NCBI RefSeq assembly: GCF_001194135.2
Contig: NC_068987.1
Coordinates: forward strand, 12,366,001 to 12,408,302
DNA from: Octopus bimaculoides
Lineage: Eukaryota
Reading direction: 5' to 3'
Length of the DNA: 42,302 nucleotides
In this document: positions 65 to 34,534 of the stretch, one piece after another
Layout of the letters: the number at the start of each line of letters is the position of its first letter
Position numbering within the stretch: position 1 is the stretch's first letter
Program-made: the position numbers and the translations under genes
Notes under the pieces: model-generated
Database searches by the model: none
The model's input: the letters and a program-made list of their open reading frames with translations, nothing else
Told to the model about the DNA's origin: nothing

Positions 65-166
65 TTGACTAAAGACGGTGCTTGACTAAAGGCGGTGCTT
101 GACTAAAGGCGGCGCTTGACTAAAGGCGGCGCTTGACTAAAGGCGGTGCTTGACTAAAGGCGGTGC
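65..166 (+). repeat. 17-bp minisatellite, 6 copies (TTGACTAAAGGCGGTGC), derived from the S1 SINE tail
   Basis: Units lie at 65, 82, 99, 116, 133 and 150. The unit matches TCGACTAAAGGCGGTGC in S1 tails (e.g. near 41505). Confidence 0.92.
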
Positions 167-194
167 TATCATTTAAACATTGCTATTCTTATAT

Positions 195-605: not shown

Positions 606-1527
606 NNNNNNNNNNNNNNNNNNNNNNNNNNNNNNNNNNNNNNNNNNNNNNNNNNNNNNNNNNNNNNNNNNNNNNNNNNNNNNNNNNNNNNNNNNNNNNN
701 NNNNNNNNNNNNNNNNNNNNNNNNNNNNNNNNNNNNNNNNNNNNNNNNNNNNNNNNNNNNNNNNNNNNNNNNNNNNNNNNNNNNNNNNNNNNNNNNNNNN
801 NNNNNNNNNNNNNNNNNNNNNNNNNNNNNNNNNNNNNNNNNNNNNNNNNNNNNNNNNNNNNNNNNNNNNNNNNNNNNNNNNNNNNNNNNNNNNNNNNNNN
901 NNNNNNNNNNNNNNNNNNNNNNNNNNNNNNNNNNNNNNNNNNNNNNNNNNNNNNNNNNNNNNNNNNNNNNNNNNNNNNNNNNNNNNNNNNNNNNNNNNNN
1001 NNNNNNNNNNNNNNNNNNNNNNNNNNNNNNNNNNNNNNNNNNNNNNNNNNNNNNNNNNNNNNNNNNNNNNNNNNNNNNNNNNNNNNNNNNNNNNNNNNNN
1101 NNNNNNNNNNNNNNNNNNNNNNNNNNNNNNNNNNNNNNNNNNNNNNNNNNNNNNNNNNNNNNNNNNNNNNNNNNNNNNNNNNNNNNNNNNNNNNNNNNNN
1201 NNNNNNNNNNNNNNNNNNNNNNNNNNNNNNNNNNNNNNNNNNNNNNNNNNNNNNNNNNNNNNNNNNNNNNNNNNNNNNNNNNNNNNNNNNNNNNNNNNNN
1301 NNNNNNNNNNNNNNNNNNNNNNNNNNNNNNNNNNNNNNNNNNNNNNNNNNNNNNNNNNNNNNNNNNNNNNNNNNNNNNNNNNNNNNNNNNNNNNNNNNNN
1401 NNNNNNNNNNNNNNNNNNNNNNNNNNNNNNNNNNNNNNNNNNNNNNNNNNNNNNNNNNNNNNNNNNNNNNNNNNNNNNNNNNNNNNNNNNNNNNNNNNNN
1501 NNNNNNNNNNNNNNNNNNNNNNNNNNN
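606..1527. other. Assembly gap (N). Further gaps: 2173-2874, 17812-18096, 19176-20003, 23414-23423, 24648-25114, 29425-29654
   Basis: N runs, each abutting (TA)n, (CA)n or (TG)n on at least one side. Confidence 0.98.
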
Positions 1528-4369: not shown

Positions 4370-4885
4370 TGTTGTTTTTTTTCTTCTTTCTTCAAATTTT
4401 CTTCCATTTCTCATCAAGTGTTTTCCGTACACCTAGGGCAGAGAAGCTCATTGTATGCATTCCCAGTTTACACACGTAAATTCACAGGTAAAATATGTAT
4501 TTAAAAAAAAATTGATAAATAAATAAATTCATAAATGGAAGTTGTTTTCACAGCGATAATTCTCTTCTCAGTACATGAGTCGTTCCAGTTAACACAATTT
4601 TTTTCACTTCCTGCAGGGATAGTAAGTCTGGTATCATTTTCAAATAGGTTTCAGTACCTTTTTTTTTTTATCATTCTTAGAGATCCTACAATCACTGGTA
4701 CGGTAGTCGCCTTGAGGTGCCACATTTTCTCAATTTCTATTAGCAAGTCTTTATATTTACTGATCTTGTCAAATTCTTTCGCTGCTATATTATGATCGCA
4801 AGGAATACTCAAGACAATTAATAAACACATCTTTGTCTGATCTTTTATAATAATATCCGGTTTATTAGCTTTTATTTTTATTATT
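4370..4885 (-). mobile_element. 5'-truncated non-LTR retrotransposon, R4/Dong-like: C-terminal restriction-like endonuclease remnant (4548-4880), 3' UTR and (AAT)n tail
   Basis: Translates to ANKPDIIIKD..CLLIVLSIPCDHNIAAKEFDKISKYKDLLIEIEKMW..TTVPVIVGSL, then after a frameshift at a poly-T run EVKKIVLTGTTHVLRRELSL*. This fits the RLE PD..D motif and the K..KY motif. Confidence 0.85.
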
Positions 4886-4959
4886 ATTATCATCATCATC
4901 ATCATCATCATCATCATTATTATTATTATTACTATTATTATTACTGTTATTATTGTGAA

Positions 4960-5180
4960 AGATAGAGAGCTGGTAGAATAGTTAGAGTGTCATAAAAAAA
5001 TGTTTTACGTATTCCTTCCAGTTCGTTATGTGCTGAATTCAAATTCTGTTACGGTCAATGTTTATTTTTCATACTTTCAGGTCAATAAAATAAATACTTG
5101 TTAAGCATCAGCTTGTATGTAAACACCTTGCCTTCTCCACCCAAAATTGCTGGCCTTGTGCCAAAATTAGAAAGAATTAT
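4960..5180 (+). mobile_element. S2 SINE, diverged
   Basis: Starts GAGCTGGTAGAAT.GTTAG, contains GAATTCAAATT, and ends AGAAAGAATTATT. Confidence 0.7.
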
Positions 5181-23413: not shown

Positions 23414-23423
23414 NNNNNNNNNN

Positions 23424-24560: not shown

Positions 24561-26155
24561 ATCGTCATTGTCATCGTCACCACCATCACCACCACCACAA
24601 ACAATGTGTACACACACACATATATATGTATATATATATATATATATNNNNNNNNNNNNNNNNNNNNNNNNNNNNNNNNNNNNNNNNNNNNNNNNNNNNN
24701 NNNNNNNNNNNNNNNNNNNNNNNNNNNNNNNNNNNNNNNNNNNNNNNNNNNNNNNNNNNNNNNNNNNNNNNNNNNNNNNNNNNNNNNNNNNNNNNNNNNN
24801 NNNNNNNNNNNNNNNNNNNNNNNNNNNNNNNNNNNNNNNNNNNNNNNNNNNNNNNNNNNNNNNNNNNNNNNNNNNNNNNNNNNNNNNNNNNNNNNNNNNN
24901 NNNNNNNNNNNNNNNNNNNNNNNNNNNNNNNNNNNNNNNNNNNNNNNNNNNNNNNNNNNNNNNNNNNNNNNNNNNNNNNNNNNNNNNNNNNNNNNNNNNN
25001 NNNNNNNNNNNNNNNNNNNNNNNNNNNNNNNNNNNNNNNNNNNNNNNNNNNNNNNNNNNNNNNNNNNNNNNNNNNNNNNNNNNNNNNNNNNNNNNNNNNN
25101 NNNNNNNNNNNNNNGCATGCATGTTTGTTCCCCACCACTGCCTGACGACTGGTGTTGGTGTGTTTACATGGTTCGGCAAAAGAGAACGATGGAACAAGTA
25201 CTAGGCTTATTAAAAGAAGAAAAATAAGGGATCTTTCTGATTTGGTGGGCACCACTTGTTTTCTTAGTACTGCCGATAGTTGTTGTTGACAAGCAACGGC
25301 ACTAATTTTATTCAAGGGAAAAGATCCCATTACACCACTTTCAGTAGAAAACACACTAAATAAAACATGAATAAAAAGTGGCGCCCGCCAAATCAGAAGG
25401 ATCAAAATAAGTACCACGGGCAATTCTTTTGACTAAAATTTCCGCACAAGACAGTGTTCCAGCATGGCCACAGTCTAATGACTGAAACAAGTAAAAGATA
25501 AAAACTAAAAAATGAAAAATAGAAGATAAAAGACCATGTACTGATTGCACAGAAATACTAATGATCAATGTTTTGACATTGACTGAGGAGAAAACAAGTT
25601 GCCTATGACAAATATTAAATCTCTTAAGCTTGTCAATCAAATTGTAAAGCTTGACTCCTAGGCATTTCTGAGGAAGCAAACTCATAAATCTCAGAGAATA
25701 TATTCATTTTCTTCTTCTTAATCTCTCTTTTCCTTCTTCTTCTGTTTTTATTTGTATATTTGTTTGCATACCAGCACGTGTAGATGCATGTACTATTAAA
25801 TAATTCTTTGCTTCAGCTCATCTGAAGTATGCTGTCTGCATAACCATCTCCCTTAATTTAACCCCCCTTACCTGAACCATTATTCCTCCAGCTGTTATCC
25901 TTACAGTACCTCACTTTGCTTACCACAAACCTGGGATAGCAGACTTCTCCATAACTTCCATAGAGTAAGTCCTAGGGTCGATTTGCTCGACTACAGGCAG
26001 TGCTCCAGCATGGCCGCAGTCAAATGACTGAAACAAGTAAAAGAGTAAAAGAGTAATAGAGATATTAAATTATGCTGGCCACAATCTACTGATGCTGACT
26101 GGTGAACCAGTTTTTGGAGGATTCCATCAAGCTGTACCAATATTATGTTGGATAA

Positions 26156-26310
26156 ATATAGCAATAATAGCAATAAAAATTGTTGGATGGAATTTATAAA
26201 GATTTAATGCATTGCTATGTGCATTTCCAGAGACATTTGATTTGTGGAAATGCACGTAGCGATGCATTAAATGTTTGTAAATTCCATCCAACAATTTTTA
26301 TTGTTATTAT

Positions 26311-26318
<8 letters not shown>
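26156..26318. repeat. Long near-perfect inverted repeat (foldback)
   Basis: Core arms 26163-26229 and 26245-26311 are 67 nt each and 62/67 complementary, around a 15-nt spacer. They extend to 74 nt with one more mismatch. Confidence 0.97.
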
Positions 26319-26365
<47 letters not shown>

Positions 26366-26589
26366 TATATACATATGTATATGTACATACTTACATCTAT
26401 ACATACATATGCATATGTGGGCACAGGACGTCACAAAACATAAACAACAAAAAGTACAAAGTACGAGTACATGGAATATGAACTGTTTTTTCGAACAACG
26501 AAAGACACAAATGGAAAATAAGACTAACAGCATAAAGAACGATCCTTCATCAGTTGTTGGCTGTTTTTCTACTCCTGTATTTCGATCAG

Positions 26590-26745
26590 ATGAGCTTCTT
26601 TCAGTTTCCATCTGCCTAATTCATTCGCAAGGCTTTGGTTGGCCAGAGCCTTACTGGAATACATTTGCCCAAGGTGCCATGCAGAGAGACAAAGAACCCA
26701 AGACTACATGGTTGGGAAGCAAGCTCCTTAACCATACAGACACGT
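26590..26745 (-). mobile_element. S1 SINE head/CORE
   Basis: Contains CTTCTTTCAGTTTCC...TTGCCCAAGGTGCC...GGTTGGGAAGCAAG. Confidence 0.75.
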
Positions 26746-27094
26746 CTGGAAAAGTAAAATTGTCTGCAACAGTTTGAACCAAGAAAATAAGAAGATAAAA
26801 CTCAGACATTGCAAGTATTCAGCCCTGTAGTGTTTTAATGTTTCTGTAATTCTATTTCCTGCCCTTTACATTGTTCATTATATTGACAGAAATAAAGACA
26901 TTAAATGATATCTTTCTATTTATACATCAATATACAACAGACAGTCAGCATTGTGTGTGCTTATTTTTTTCTTCCTGTAGTTTACTTCCATTAATAGCTG
27001 AAGTAATCTAAATATAAAAGAAAATAGTTTTCCATTGACATTGAAATGGCAATATATATTATTGTCCTTTGTGTGTGTATGTATGTGTGTGTGT

Positions 27095-27131
<37 letters not shown>

Positions 27132-29019
27132 TGGCTGTGTGTGAGTGGTTGCATGTGTACTTTTGCCTTGACAACATATGATATTTGTAGATGGGCATCA
27201 CCATCATACAAGCGATGTTATATGTTTCTAAGGAAAAAATAAATAACCATGTCCTGGCCATGGTGAAATATCAGTTTGCTTGGAAGCAGGTGAGGGCTGG
27301 TGACTGGAAGAGCATCTGGTCATCTGGTCATAGAAAATCTGTCTCAACAAATTCCTCTTGACCTCTGCAAGAACTGAAAAGTTAGCAGTAAATGAAGATG
27401 GTGGTGGGGAGAAGGGTAGAGGGATAGAAGGAGGACGTGCCATTTAAAATGTGTTTACAAAATTGGAACGGTCAATATTTTGTCTCCAAGAAGCCTCCTA
27501 AAGAGGCTTATGTGTTCCAAAACATAGTGCTCCACTTAAAACTATAGGGATTGTCAGACAAAGACTCTCGAGTTGTCTTCTCACTGAAGAATATCCCAGA
27601 CAGTTTGAACTAAACCCAAAATACTTGTTCTGAAATAGAAACCAGGGAGCAAGCATTTAGTGATTTGTGTCAGAGGTTGCCAGGCTAGAATTAAATTAGA
27701 AGAGATTTAGATTAAATTATGCTGGTGTGTATAAAATTGATAATGTATATGCAAACATTGAACATCCCTGACCATTCTGGGCTCCTTTTGGGGGTCTTTT
27801 GGCAAGGGTCTGTCTGTTACAAACCCTAGGACTCATAAGGCCAGAGCTTAGATTGGTTTTCATAGTGTATAAGTGACTGAGATTAGAACCCTACCATATG
27901 AAAAGGAAGCTAGTCCCTCACAGGTTAACTTCCCAGCTATTGCTCAAGTTCGTTTATAGCTGATTGAACTGAAGGAACATGAAATGAAGTATTTTGCTTA
28001 CAAACACAATGCATCATCTGGTTTGGGTATTGAACCCATGACCTTACTTTCATGAGTGTAACATCTGAACCACTAGACTATACACCATTTCTACGAAGGG
28101 CCATTGTTGTAGCACAAGAATGAATCCTGTAAAATTTGTTCATTAATGGATAGGTGTGAGAACTTAAGGAATATGTACAGGAGAATGTAATTTAGGGATT
28201 AATTTGATTTGTGGAATAGGGAACACAGAGGTTTTTGGGCCCACAGTGACATCTAGGAAGTTAGTGTTTGTGAGATTAACATCTACAGGGATGACCACTT
28301 CACCAGCAATGTCCAAGGTTTTTAAAGAAAGAATGCAATGTGGATGTGTGTGAGGGGAATGGTATGTGTATGCACATACCATGTTAATTATGTATCAAAT
28401 TTTCCATTGCAATATTTGTCACTGGATGATAAAGATGACAAAGTTAAAAATAAGGAAACACTAAAGCAAGAGAATTCTGAACATTTAATCACACTTTCAT
28501 GGCATTTATTAGAAAAGTTAATTAGAAAAGTATAATGCCTCATCAAGAGGTTTGTGATAACCTTTAATGAACATTCAAGTACCAAATTATGTTGTGGAGC
28601 AGGTGATTGCAGCAAGAATATATTTGACTGTGGGTCTATTCAATCATAAAAAAACAGCATTATCTTTAGCAATAACTATAAGAGCAGCTGTCAAAGTGAA
28701 ATTTCTAAAACCTTTGAGCTGAAAAGAGAATACTGTTTAGTACAACACAGTAGTGCCAAAAACATTTGGCAACAACTAAACAGTAATATTTATCAAGCTG
28801 CCTCTGATTATTTGGTACAAATACTTTGGGTTACTAAGCCAGCATTAGAATCTTGCATCAGCACTGGTGGTGGCCTACAAAATTCCAGTGTTTCTAGTGT
28901 TTTAATTTGTCTAAAAAATTTGTCTGGAAAATTCTGTTGTAGCTTGTCAAAATGAATTTGTTTTTATGATGACATTTACAAATTATTTCTGATCTTGTGT
29001 TTAATATGTCTGTTGTTTG

Positions 29020-29330
29020 ATGTTTTCTACTATAGCCTCAGGTAGACCAAAACCTTGTGAGTGGATTTGGTAGATGGAAACTGAAAGAAGCCCATTGTAT
29101 ATATGTATGTGCTTGTGTATGTTTGTGCGTCTGTGTTTGTCCACCCAACATCGCTTGACAACCGATGCTGGTGTGATTACATCCCCATAACTTAGCGGTT
29201 CAGCAAAAGACCTCGATAAAATAAGTACTAGGCTTACAAAGAATAAATCCTGGTCGATTTGCTCGACTAAAGGTGGTGCTCCAGCATGGCCGCAGTCAAA
29301 TGACTGAAACAAGTAAAAGAATAAAAGAGA
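29020..29330 (+). mobile_element. S1 SINE, 5'-truncated; another copy lies at 29800-30185
   Basis: CORE end, short linker, tail GACTAAAGGTGGTGCTCCAGCATGGCC. Confidence 0.85.
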
Positions 29331-29355
29331 GTATACATACATAAATACATACATA

Positions 29356-29400
<45 letters not shown>

Positions 29401-29733
29401 ACACACACACACACACACACACACNNNNNNNNNNNNNNNNNNNNNNNNNNNNNNNNNNNNNNNNNNNNNNNNNNNNNNNNNNNNNNNNNNNNNNNNNNNN
29501 NNNNNNNNNNNNNNNNNNNNNNNNNNNNNNNNNNNNNNNNNNNNNNNNNNNNNNNNNNNNNNNNNNNNNNNNNNNNNNNNNNNNNNNNNNNNNNNNNNNN
29601 NNNNNNNNNNNNNNNNNNNNNNNNNNNNNNNNNNNNNNNNNNNNNNNNNNNNNNTGCCTTTCATTTATGTATGTGTAGACTCATATATATATGTATATAC
29701 ATTCATACTTAGACACACTGACACACACATACC

Positions 29734-33249: not shown

Positions 33250-34115
33250 AGGCGGCAAACTGGCAGAATCCTTAGCACGCCAGGCAAAATGCTTAGCAGT
33301 ATTTTGTCTGCTGTGACATTCTGAGTTCAAATTCTGCCGAGGTCAACTTTGCCTTTCAGGGTCAATGAAATAAGTACCAGTTACAACAGAAAGGATTATT
33401 TATAGCTGGATTTTGCTTTGTGACACATAAAAACAAACATATTAGTTCAAATTTTTAGCACAAGGCCAGCAATTTCAGGGAAGGGATAAGTCAATTTATA
33501 TGAATCCCAGTGTTCAACTGGTACTTATTTCATCCACTCCGAAAGGATGGATGGCAAAATTGACCTCAGCAGAATTTGAACTCAGAATGTAGTGATGGAC
33601 AAACTGCCACTAAGCATTTTGTCTGGTGTGCTAATGATTCTACCAGCTCACCACCTTAATAAAGACTTACATATTTTCTACTCTAGGTACAAGGCCCTAA
33701 ATTTTGGGGGAGGAGGCCAGTCAATTAGATCGACCCCAGTACACAATTGGTACTTAATTTATCGATCCTGAAAGGATGAAAAGCAAAGTCGACCTTGGTG
33801 GAATTTGAACTCAGAACTAAAGACAGACGAAATACCACTAAGCATTTTGCCTGGCATGCTAACAACTCTGCCAGCTTACCACCTTAGAATATCTACATTA
33901 TTCTTTCCTATTGTAGGCACAAGGTTCAACATTTTGGGGGAGAGGGCTAGTCGATTAGATCAACCCCAGTACACAACTGGTACTTAATTTATCGACCCTG
34001 AAAGGATGAAAGGCAAAATCGACCTCAGCAGAATTTGAACTCAGAATGTAACGACAGACGAAATACCACTAGGCATCTTGCCCGGCGTGCTAACATTTCT
34101 GCCAGCTCACCGCCT
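33250..34115. mobile_element. S2 SINE cluster: one plus copy (33250-33400) and three head-to-tail minus copies (33450-33657, 33675-33885, 33905-34115)
   Basis: Repeated GGAATTTGAACTCAGAA (B-box reverse complement) and GCCAGCTCACCGCC heads. Confidence 0.85.
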
Positions 34116-34534
34116 TGACTCACATATTAATAAGTATATTCAGGTGAGAAGATAGTTAACTCTCCTTGTATAAATGACCATTCAGAGGACATCACACTTG
34201 CATATTTAAATAGATTATATAAAAACTGAAGCAGCCTTAAAGCTTTTCCTTGGTCAATATTAAATAGAAAAGAAACAACATCATCAAAACAATTTAGTCT
34301 CTTTATTGACAAGCATACATCGAAACAAGGCTAGTATATTCTCACAGTCAGATCTATGCTAATTATAGTAATGCTATAATTAGTTCTTGAAGCTCTTCAA
34401 ACTAATATAATTGAGGATATCCTGCTTCTTGTAGTTATATGAGACTCTTTGATAAAAACACCATTATGAATTATAAGTGGTTTGCAATGGATCATTTATA
34501 CATGCTTTTCGGTAGTTATTTCAATATTCCTATT

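What the first reader, a model, noticed from the sequence alone, without database searches (positions are those of the whole stretch)
26156..26318. Near-perfect ~74-bp RNA hairpin in unique sequence, with G-U bias on the plus strand
Seen: in the 67-bp core, four of the five arm differences become G-U wobbles in a plus-strand transcript and one is G-G. The outer extension adds one C-A mismatch. The loop can close further to about 7 nt. The arms are not microsatellite and match no other repeat in the window. Inference: a candidate long hairpin/endo-siRNA or miRNA-type precursor or ADAR substrate, notable given coleoid RNA editing and miRNA expansion. Alternatives are a palindromic MITE or a replication fold-back. 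Two of the wobbles are also explained by CpG decay, so the strand bias alone is weak evidence.
Basis: partly seen in the sequence, partly recalled or inferred. Interest (0 to 1): 0.75.

Follow-up and report, generated by a model that had tools for sequence, protein, structure and literature searches.

The report
Decaying AT-rich palindrome in octopus DNA
The 74-bp-stem hairpin is really in the sequence, but it looks like an ordinary, slowly decaying inverted duplication (or small palindromic transposon) in repeat-rich non-coding octopus DNA, and nothing found here shows it is a small-RNA gene.

Summary
Arms 26156-26229 and 26245-26318 (74 nt, 6 mismatches; 78 nt at 91% if extended) flank a 15-nt spacer. 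The fold is far beyond chance (z about -19 on both strands). It is the only long inverted repeat in the window that is not low-complexity. The interpretation as a small-RNA gene is not supported:
- No Rfam family reaches its threshold. Dozens of miRNA models hit weakly on both strands through structure alone.
- The stem is about twice the length of a canonical miRNA precursor.
- A published survey finds no evidence of an endo-siRNA pathway in molluscs.
- The plus-strand G-U bias is not significant (exact test 6/32, p = 0.19).

The outer ~20 nt of each arm is degenerate (AAT)n/(ATT)n microsatellite, and the right arm runs into a (TA)34 tract. The locus lies between two SINE copies, with no coding exon found. 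The arms differ by about 9%, which suggests roughly 12-13 My of neutral decay.

My best reading is a one-step local inverted duplication (replication template switch or fold-back). A palindromic MITE is a close rival. Genome-wide copy number, orthologous loci and expression could not be checked with these tools. If transcribed, the element would be a passive ADAR substrate. Interest is low.

The parts
26156..26229 (.). Left arm of the inverted repeat. The outer 26160-26179 is (AAT)n-like; the inner 26176-26229 is unique sequence. It carries TG at the two sites where the right arm keeps CG.
26230..26244 (.). 15-nt spacer GAGACATTTGATTTG. In + strand RNA it can close further to a 4-nt loop through four weak pairs.
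26245..26318 (.). Right arm of the inverted repeat. The inner part is unique and has two retained CpGs (26255-56, 26260-61). The outer 26295-26315 is (ATT)n-like and contains a T5 run at 26295-26299.
26152..26155 (.). Outermost 4 nt of complementarity on the left (ATAA), pairing with 26319-26322 inside the TA tract. It is low complexity and has one A-A mismatch.
26314..26382 (.). (TA)34 microsatellite that abuts and overlaps the outer end of the right arm. This makes any TA or 8-bp target-site duplication uninformative.
25955..26056 (+). Context: 3' end of an octopus SINE copy, about 100 bp upstream of the hairpin. It is 88% identical to a SINE in O. bimaculoides locus L001. A T5 run at 26111-26115 lies between it and the hairpin.
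26590..26790 (-). Context: a second SINE copy downstream, recognised from the frame translation typical of the window's SINE copies and a weak blastn match to L001.
26146..26153 (+). TGTTGGAT, an 8-nt direct repeat of 26181-26188, lying exactly at the left edge of the inverted repeat. It may be microhomology at a switch point. This is unproven.
   Evidence: read directly from the sequence

Best explanation
This is a real, non-genic DNA palindrome in repeat-rich octopus sequence. I think it most likely arose in one step as a local inverted duplication. During replication the nascent strand switched template (fold-back or inter-strand) at the border of an (ATT)n-(TA)n microsatellite and copied about 75 nt of adjacent sequence in reverse complement, leaving 15 nt as a spacer. 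It has since decayed by ordinary point mutation, mostly transitions, two of them at CpG sites, for roughly 10-15 million years. It has no dedicated function. If the region is transcribed within a longer RNA, the + strand would fold into an A-U-rich duplex of about 74 bp. In a coleoid that duplex would mainly be a promiscuous ADAR target, not a Drosha/Dicer substrate.

Shown: the structure, its uniqueness in the window, its microsatellite-like outer ends, the mutation pattern, and the lack of any RNA-family match. Inferred: the template-switch origin, the age, neutrality, and the ADAR outcome.
For: - The palindrome is real and far beyond chance.
- Its inner ~54 bp has no second copy or fragment in the 42 kb window, while SINE families recur many times there. 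It is also absent from about 11 kb of non-N O. bimaculoides DNA.
- The outer ~20 nt of each arm is the same degenerate ATT microsatellite seen at 4.9, 13.8, 21.7 and 22.6 kb.
- Complementarity continues 8 nt (7/8) into the adjoining TA tract. This is expected if local sequence was copied and is more than a 2-nt TA duplication would give.
- The arm length lies within documented template-switch events: up to 83 nt, with perfect hairpins made in a single event (PMC10710096).
- Of the 7 arm differences, 5 are transitions, 2 of them at CpG. The G-U/A-C split is 4:1, rank 6 of 32 (p = 0.19). This is consistent with neutral decay.
- The JC distance between arms is 0.096. With JC 0.09 taken as about 25 My for octopus repeats (PMC13282606), that gives about 13 My.
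- No Rfam family reaches threshold.
- No coding exon was recognised in the window; I found only a mariner-type transposase remnant, plus fragments that read like LINE/retroelement pieces (my reading; no Pfam support).
- The ~9% arm divergence and the 1 kb distance to the nearest N gap argue against an assembly fold-back artefact.
Against: - Genome-wide copy number could not be measured, so a multi-copy MITE is not excluded.
- The flanks can be read as a TA/TA duplication (element 26161-26314). The size (154-171 bp) is close to the mean of about 196 bp for recently active MITE insertions in O. vulgaris.
- Tc1/mariner elements are abundant in octopus, and a remnant lies 10 kb away.
- An arm of 74-78 nt is at the long end of reported template-switch events.
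- An unconditional neutral simulation put the + strand folding advantage in the top 3.7%. Most of that comes from a baseline shift due to the loop and the two transversion pairs.
- Neutrality and lack of transcription are assumed, not shown.
Confidence: 0.42

Rival explanations
1. This is a solitary copy of a small, almost fully palindromic MITE or fold-back-type non-autonomous DNA transposon. It inserted at a TA within a TA-rich tract, was mobilised by a Tc1/mariner-type or hAT-type transposase, and is now decaying. The arm mismatches were partly inherited from the master copy.
For: - Long terminal inverted repeats, a short internal spacer, no coding capacity and a size of 154-171 bp.
- TA immediately outside 26161 and 26314.
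- Under a hAT-like reading (element 26159-26315) the 8-bp flanks match 6/8 and the ends read TAGCA / TAGTA.
- MITE and Tc1/mariner families are annotated in O. vulgaris, where recently active MITE insertions average about 196 bp.
- A decayed mariner-type transposase lies at 15.8-16.5 kb.
- Precedent: Made1, with 37-bp TIRs plus 6 bp, is a near-perfect palindrome (PMC1784062).
Against: - There is no second copy or fragment of the unique inner arm in the 42 kb window or in L001.
- The terminal ~20 nt are ATT-microsatellite-like, not a recognisable transposase-binding end, and resemble the local microsatellites.
- The putative duplications lie in a (TA)n tract, so they carry no information.
- There is no similarity to the nearby mariner remnant, which has no detectable TIRs.
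Confidence: 0.33
2. This is a transcribed hairpin RNA locus on the + strand with a function of its own. It could be a young lineage-specific miRNA-like or hairpin small-RNA precursor (possibly with a miR-33-type seed), or a long duplex that recruits ADAR within a neural transcript. Whichever way the palindrome arose, selection would now keep the + strand pairing.
For: - The + strand folds 18-20 kcal/mol better than the - strand.
- Four of the five transition differences are G-U on +.
- The + strand advantage fell in the top 3.7% of an unconditional neutral simulation.
- The best animal miRNA model hit is mir-33, at 31.9 bits on +. UGCAUUG lies at 26208-26214, so a 5p product starting at 26207, about 23 nt from the loop, would carry it as its seed.
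- Octopuses gained about 90 novel miRNA families of unknown source (PMC9699675).
- Palindromic repeats and template-switch hairpins are known sources of new miRNAs.
Against: - The exact conditional test gives 6/32, and the count-based binomial gives 0.19.
- Every Rfam hit is far below its gathering score. mir-33 also hits the - strand at 27.7 bits, and only 14 of 21 mature positions match in a family whose mature sequence is nearly invariant (my own knowledge).
- A 74-78-bp continuous stem lacks the single-stranded basal junction about 35 bp from the loop. The template-switch study accepted stems of 30-55 nt as miRNA-like.
- No evidence of an endo-siRNA pathway in molluscs.
- No exon or promoter evidence in the window.
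- Conservation and expression are untested.
Confidence: 0.12
3. This is an assembly or library artefact: a chimeric fold-back read or a palindromic contig end, in a draft short-read scaffold.
For: The window is a draft scaffold with seven N gaps. Fold-back chimeras are a known artefact class (my own knowledge).
Against: The arms differ at 7 of 78 positions in a transition-rich, CpG-biased pattern, whereas an artefact would be a perfect palindrome. The hairpin sits inside a contiguous 4.3 kb block (25115-29424), about 1 kb from the nearest gap.
Confidence: 0.03

Closest known systems
Template-switch mutation (TSM) hairpins, as described for primate and rodent de novo miRNA loci (PMC10710096)
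   Same: An inverted copy lies next to its source with a short spacer. Pairing was created in one event and then eroded by point mutations. The arm length is within the reported range (up to 83 nt). The locus-specific, non-repeat core also fits.
   Different: No outgroup sequence is available to show the state before the event. The stem (74-78 bp) is longer than the 30-55 nt that study accepted as miRNA-like. Part of each arm is microsatellite, a class that study filtered out. No expression evidence exists.
Made1 / hsa-mir-548 palindromic MITE (PMC1784062)
   Same: A near-perfect palindrome made of two long terminal inverted repeats around a few unpaired bases. The flanks are compatible with TA duplications. 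It forms a very stable RNA hairpin if transcribed.
   Different: Made1 has 37-bp arms and 7,850 annotated copies in the human genome. Here the arms are twice as long, only one copy is seen, and there is no recognisable Tc1/mariner end sequence.
Drosophila-type hairpin RNA (hpRNA) endo-siRNA loci
   Same: A long, nearly perfect intramolecular duplex much longer than a miRNA precursor.
   Different: hpRNA loci depend on a dedicated siRNA Dicer/Argonaute pathway (my own knowledge). A survey of 32 molluscs found no evidence of endo-siRNAs (PMC12479628). No reads could be tested here.
Inverted-repeat ADAR substrates in introns and 3' UTRs of coleoids (PMC9699675) and other animals
   Same: If transcribed, a 74-bp A-U-rich duplex would meet the structural requirement for promiscuous A-to-I editing.
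   Different: Transcription and editing are unknown. This would be a passive property and not evidence of function.
mir-33 (RF00667)
   Same: The 5p arm contains UGCAUUG followed by UGCAUU, at the right distance from the loop. mir-33 is the best-scoring animal miRNA model on the inner hairpin (31.9 bits).
   Different: The score is below the gathering score of 50. The reverse strand scores 27.7. Only 14 of 21 mature positions match, with an indel. The stem continues about 45 bp beyond the model.

Membership tests
Canonical animal miRNA precursor | Match to a curated miRNA family at or above its gathering score | tested here: not met
   There are 0 hits at gathering thresholds in the whole window. 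In E-value mode 48 models hit at 16-60 bits against gathering scores of 40-249, many on both strands.
Canonical animal miRNA precursor | Stem of about 35 bp with a single-stranded basal junction and imperfect pairing | tested here: not met
   The stem is continuous over 74-78 bp, with only isolated mismatches or wobbles and no basal junction near 35 bp. MFEI is 2.35 at 26% GC.
Canonical animal miRNA precursor | Small-RNA reads from both arms with 2-nt 3' overhangs and homogeneous 5' ends | not testable with these tools
   No read data are available. The supplements of the octopus miRNA paper do not hold sequences as text: a let-7 control search also returned nothing.
Canonical animal miRNA precursor | Presence in a second species | not testable with these tools
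   No cephalopod genome could be searched by nucleotide. The routes through the protein database failed.
mir-33 (RF00667) | Near-identical mature 5p sequence and a score at or above 50 bits | tested here: not met
   The score is 31.9 bits on + and 27.7 on -, and 14 of 21 mature positions match with one insertion.
hpRNA / endo-siRNA locus | Long, near-perfect intramolecular duplex | tested here: met
   74-bp stem, -105.8 kcal/mol, z -18.8.
hpRNA / endo-siRNA locus | The host has a siRNA-generating pathway, and 21-22-nt reads map to the duplex | not testable with these tools
   Literature only: there is no evidence of endo-siRNAs in 32 molluscs, with O. bimaculoides small-RNA libraries among the data (PMC12479628). 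This argues against membership.
MITE | Terminal inverted repeats, small size, no coding capacity | tested here: met
   The ORFs that cross it have no Pfam or protein-database match.
MITE | Target-site duplication flanking the element | tested here: inconclusive
   TA/TA around 26161-26314, or 6/8 for an 8-bp duplication around 26159-26315. Both lie in TA-rich low complexity next to (TA)34.
MITE | Many dispersed copies in the genome | tested here: inconclusive
   One copy in 42 kb and none in about 11 kb of O. bimaculoides DNA. The sample is far too small to bound copy number. There were no related matches in the metagenome, prokaryote or viral collections.
MITE | Ends related to an autonomous transposon | tested here: not met
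   No similarity to the mariner remnant at 15.8-16.5 kb, which has no detectable TIRs. The ends are ATT-microsatellite-like. This covers only the one element in the window.
Template-switch inverted duplication | Reverse-complement copy adjacent to its source with a short spacer, and a length within the documented range | tested here: met
   15-nt spacer and 74-78-nt arms. Events up to 83 nt are reported.
Template-switch inverted duplication | Outgroup or ancestral sequence that has only one arm | not testable with these tools
   No orthologous locus could be obtained.
ADAR substrate | Transcribed duplex of tens of bp with clustered A-to-G mismatches in RNA-seq | not testable with these tools
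   The duplex is predicted. Transcription and editing could not be examined.

The most novel reading that the evidence does not exclude
The palindrome is a young, octopus-lineage-specific hairpin RNA gene caught early. It would be transcribed on the + strand, with pairing kept through G-U wobbles. It would be processed non-canonically into small RNAs, possibly with a miR-33-type seed, or it would act as an ADAR-recruiting duplex. That would give a concrete example of how the coleoid miRNA expansion draws on template-switch or MITE palindromes.
Probability: 0.08. Interest if true: 0.55.

Novelty: new member of a known kind. Interest (0 to 1): 0.2.

Why it matters
As it stands it matters little. 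Near-perfect short-spacer palindromes arise routinely from template switching or MITE insertion, and most are neutral. It would matter only if it proved to be expressed and processed. The source of the ~90 novel octopus miRNA families is explicitly unknown (PMC9699675), and a dated, locus-specific palindrome producing small RNAs would be a worked example of that source. The locus also shows that plus-strand G-U enrichment in a decaying palindrome has to be tested against the 50:50 expectation for transitions before it is read as selection.

Tried and rejected
1. Exact and degenerate arm patterns against metagenome, prokaryote-genome and viral contigs. The 28-nt pattern gave nothing. The looser 10+N+10 apex pattern gave 114 + 33 loci, but none extended beyond the pattern on blastn, so they are chance matches in microbes.

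2. Using the protein database as a proxy for octopus DNA.
- The ORF across the hairpin found no candidate.
- The flank ORF found only low-complexity YIYI hits and not even the SINE part.
- Exact look-up of 8 window ORFs found none.
- Conclusion: that database does not hold this genome's non-coding ORFs, so the negatives say nothing about copy number.

3. A mariner fragment search did reach O. bimaculoides (P0112) and produced locus L001. L001 holds only about 11 kb of non-N sequence. It confirmed the host genus through SINE and mariner similarity but is useless for counting copies.

4. Literature sequence searches.
- No paper text holds the arm sequences.
- The octopus miRNA paper's supplements hold no sequences as text, since the let-7 control also failed, so that negative is void.
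- The O. vulgaris repeat paper's supplement holds no library.

5. The mir-33 lead was rejected on score, strand symmetry and 14/21 identity.

6. Read-through from the upstream SINE by Pol III was considered and rejected. A T5 run at 26111-26115 lies between the SINE and the hairpin, and each arm carries a T5 on its transcribed strand.

7. The large 'inverted repeats' at the top are N-gap against N-gap artefacts and were ignored.

8. I prepared a Pfam scan of all ORFs in the window but ran it only on ten selected ORFs, because by eye every long ORF was SINE-, LINE-, mariner- or microsatellite-derived.

Full report
**What is there**

The window is a draft eukaryotic scaffold with seven N gaps. 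It is dense with microsatellites (80 TRF rows) and has many copies of tRNA-derived SINEs. One SINE family is 87% identical to a SINE in Octopus bimaculoides chromosome record CM046625.1. A decayed mariner-type transposase is about 80% identical to DNA in the same record.

At 26152-26322 there is an inverted repeat with 78-nt arms at 91% complementarity around a 15-nt spacer. It also shows that this is the longest such structure in the window. Five of the seven other hits are plain dinucleotide or near-dinucleotide tracts; the 43-nt runner-up is built from ATAC/ATAG microsatellite, and the last is a 23-nt-arm hit with 3 mismatches.

Folding energies:

| Molecule | Energy (kcal/mol) | z-score |
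|---|---|---|
| + strand RNA | -105.8 | -18.8 |
| - strand RNA | -85.9 | -18.3 |
| Single-stranded DNA | -64 | -20.7 |

**Two corrections to the observation**

First, the arms are not entirely unique sequence. blastn at low stringency shows that the outer ~20 nt of each arm is degenerate ATT microsatellite: AGCAATAATAGCAATAAAAA on the left and TTTTTATTGTTATTATTACT on the right. It is the same kind of sequence, with the same GTT and ACT interruptions, as the arrays at 4.9, 13.8, 21.7 and 22.6 kb. The right arm then runs straight into (TA)34. Complementarity continues 8 nt into that tract with one mismatch. Only the inner ~54 bp is unique, and it has no second copy or fragment in the window.

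Second, the plus-strand G-U bias is not significant.
- Any transition in one arm of a palindrome gives G-U on one strand and A-C on the other with equal probability. That includes CpG decay, which can strike either strand of either arm.
- The observed split is four against one, a binomial 0.19 one-sided.
- I enumerated all 32 ways of assigning the five transition sites to the two strands. The observed arrangement ranks 6th for + strand stability.
- An unconditional simulation of seven neutral substitutions put the + strand advantage in the top 3.7%. Much of that is a baseline shift. A perfect version of the palindrome already favours the + strand by 3.6 kcal/mol through the loop. With the two transversion pairs included, the mean offset is 6.3 kcal/mol.
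- The same pattern can be described as four C-to-T changes on the + strand against one on the - strand. A strand-asymmetric mutation process would also produce that.

**Is it a known RNA?**

No Rfam family reaches its gathering score anywhere in the window. With permissive thresholds the hairpin hits 48 miRNA models at 16-60 bits against gathering scores of 40-249, often on both strands. The top hits are long plant hairpin families. That is the signature of structure without family-specific sequence.

The best animal model on the inner hairpin is mir-33, at 31.9 bits on + and 27.7 on -, against a gathering score of 50. The 5p arm contains UGCAUUG and UGCAUU at a plausible distance from the loop. 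Only 14 of 21 mature positions match, with an insertion. From my own knowledge, the mature miR-33 sequence is almost invariant across bilaterians. I treat the resemblance as chance and record it as a curiosity.

The stem is about twice as long as a Drosha substrate and has no basal junction. MFEI is 2.35. The study of template-switch-born miRNAs accepted stems of 30-55 nt as miRNA-like.

For the endo-siRNA reading, a survey of 32 molluscs that included O. bimaculoides small-RNA libraries reports no evidence of a dedicated endo-siRNA pathway (PMC12479628).

'ADAR substrate' is a structural truism for a 74-bp duplex. Most octopus A-to-I editing lies in introns and 3' UTRs, where such hairpins occur (PMC9699675). 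That editing requires transcription, which I could not test.

**Context**

The hairpin lies in about 530 bp of otherwise unique sequence.
- Upstream is the 3' end of a + oriented SINE, ending near 26056.
- Downstream is a - oriented SINE at about 26590-26790.
- A T5 run at 26111-26115 would stop Pol III read-through from the upstream SINE before it reached the hairpin. Each arm also carries a T5 on its own transcribed strand.
- No ORF in the window looks like a host exon. The long ones are SINE-, mariner- or microsatellite-derived, or (by my reading, without Pfam support) LINE-like, and ten tested ORFs gave no Pfam hit above threshold.

**Origin**

Two one-step mechanisms make such a structure.

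(a) A replication template switch or fold-back copies adjacent sequence in reverse complement. Events up to 83 nt that create perfect hairpins in a single step are documented (PMC10710096).

(b) A small palindromic MITE inserts, like Made1 with its 37-bp TIRs plus 6 bp (PMC1784062). MITEs and many Tc1/mariner families are annotated in O. vulgaris, where recently active MITE insertions average about 196 bp (PMC13282606).

In favour of (a):
- The arm ends are made of the local type of microsatellite and not of a recognisable transposon end.
- The pairing runs 8 nt into the neighbouring TA tract.
- No other copy or fragment is visible.
- An 8-nt direct repeat (TGTTGGAT, 26146-26153 and 26181-26188) sits exactly at the left boundary, where a switch-point microhomology would be. 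The chance expectation for that repeat is not negligible.

In favour of (b):
- The size fits.
- The flanks can be read as TA/TA, or as 6/8 for an 8-bp duplication.
- DNA transposons are abundant in octopus.

The flanking duplications lie in TA-rich low complexity and carry no information. I lean to (a) at about 0.42 against 0.33.

In either case the arms differ by JC 0.096. The published octopus calibration is JC 0.09 for about 25 My and 0.2 for about 56 My, measured as copy against consensus. Half the arm-to-arm distance then gives roughly 13 My. The Poisson range on 7 differences gives about 5-27 My. This assumes a perfect palindrome at birth followed by neutral decay. That age is near or below published O. 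vulgaris / O. bimaculoides split estimates (13-34 My; about 50 My). The hairpin may therefore be lineage-specific, which is directly testable.

An assembly artefact is unlikely. A chimeric fold-back would be a perfect palindrome, whereas these arms differ at 7 sites in a transition- and CpG-biased pattern. The locus also sits 1 kb from the nearest gap.

**What could not be done**

No tool here searches a cephalopod genome by nucleotide.
- Arm patterns against the metagenome, prokaryote and viral collections found nothing related.
- The protein database does not contain this genome's non-coding ORFs.
- The one octopus locus I could fetch holds about 11 kb of real sequence.
- Paper supplements held neither miRNA sequences nor a repeat library.

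Copy number, orthologous loci, small-RNA reads and editing all remain open. They are exactly the tests that would separate the hypotheses.

**Verdict**

This is a real and statistically overwhelming palindrome of an ordinary kind. It is best read as a neutral inverted duplication of local, partly microsatellite sequence, with a palindromic MITE as a close rival. About one chance in ten remains that it is also a transcribed, selected hairpin RNA. Interest is low unless expression data say otherwise.

Noticed in passing
window 26207-26229 (+): The 5p arm reads AUGCAUUGCUAUGUGCAUUUCCA, so a product starting at 26207 would carry the miR-33 seed UGCAUUG. The mir-33 model scores 31.9 bits (gathering score 50) and also 27.7 on the opposite strand. 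This is probably chance.
   Followed up: yes
window 26146-26153 and 26181-26188: An 8-nt direct repeat TGTTGGAT brackets the AAT-like outer part of the left arm, exactly at the boundary of the inverted repeat. It may be switch-point microhomology or coincidence.
   Followed up: partly
window 26351-26423: Rfam E-value hits to mir-297, mir-466 and mir-1277 (26-46 bits against gathering scores of 81-90) fall on the TA/CA-rich microsatellite next to the hairpin. These are low-complexity false positives.
   Followed up: no
window 15823-16532 (-): A frameshifted mariner-type transposase remnant with a weak DDE_3 hit (E 0.038). Its best database relatives are 48-56% identical. One is 'uncharacterized protein LOC128250757' of Octopus bimaculoides (66% identity over 54% of the query). 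No terminal inverted repeats were found around it.
   Followed up: partly
window 65-167: A 17-bp minisatellite (TTGACTAAAGGCGGTGC x 6, 96% matches). The unit appears to be an internal segment of the 3' region of the octopus SINE, so this would be a tandem array born inside a SINE.
   Followed up: no
window 33489-34116: 2.7 tandem copies of a 230-bp unit (79% matches) made of SINE sequence. It is either a tandemly amplified SINE or head-to-tail insertions.
   Followed up: no
window 606-1527, 2173-2874, 17812-18096, 19176-20003, 23414-23423, 24648-25114, 29425-29654: There are seven N gaps (3,444 N in all). The top 'repeats' and many long 'ORFs' are N-run artefacts. L001 from O. bimaculoides GCA_001194135.2 is likewise 45% N.
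   Followed up: yes
window 26111-26115, 26175-26179 (- strand), 26295-26299: T5 runs, which are Pol III terminator-like. One lies between the upstream SINE and the hairpin. One lies in each arm on its transcribed strand, so a Pol III transcript could not span the full hairpin.
   Followed up: no
window 10760-11002 (+) and 4654-4989 (-): Two ORF fragments read like the Cys-rich tail and the C-terminal end of LINE/retroelement proteins. This is my reading; there is no Pfam support.
   Followed up: partly
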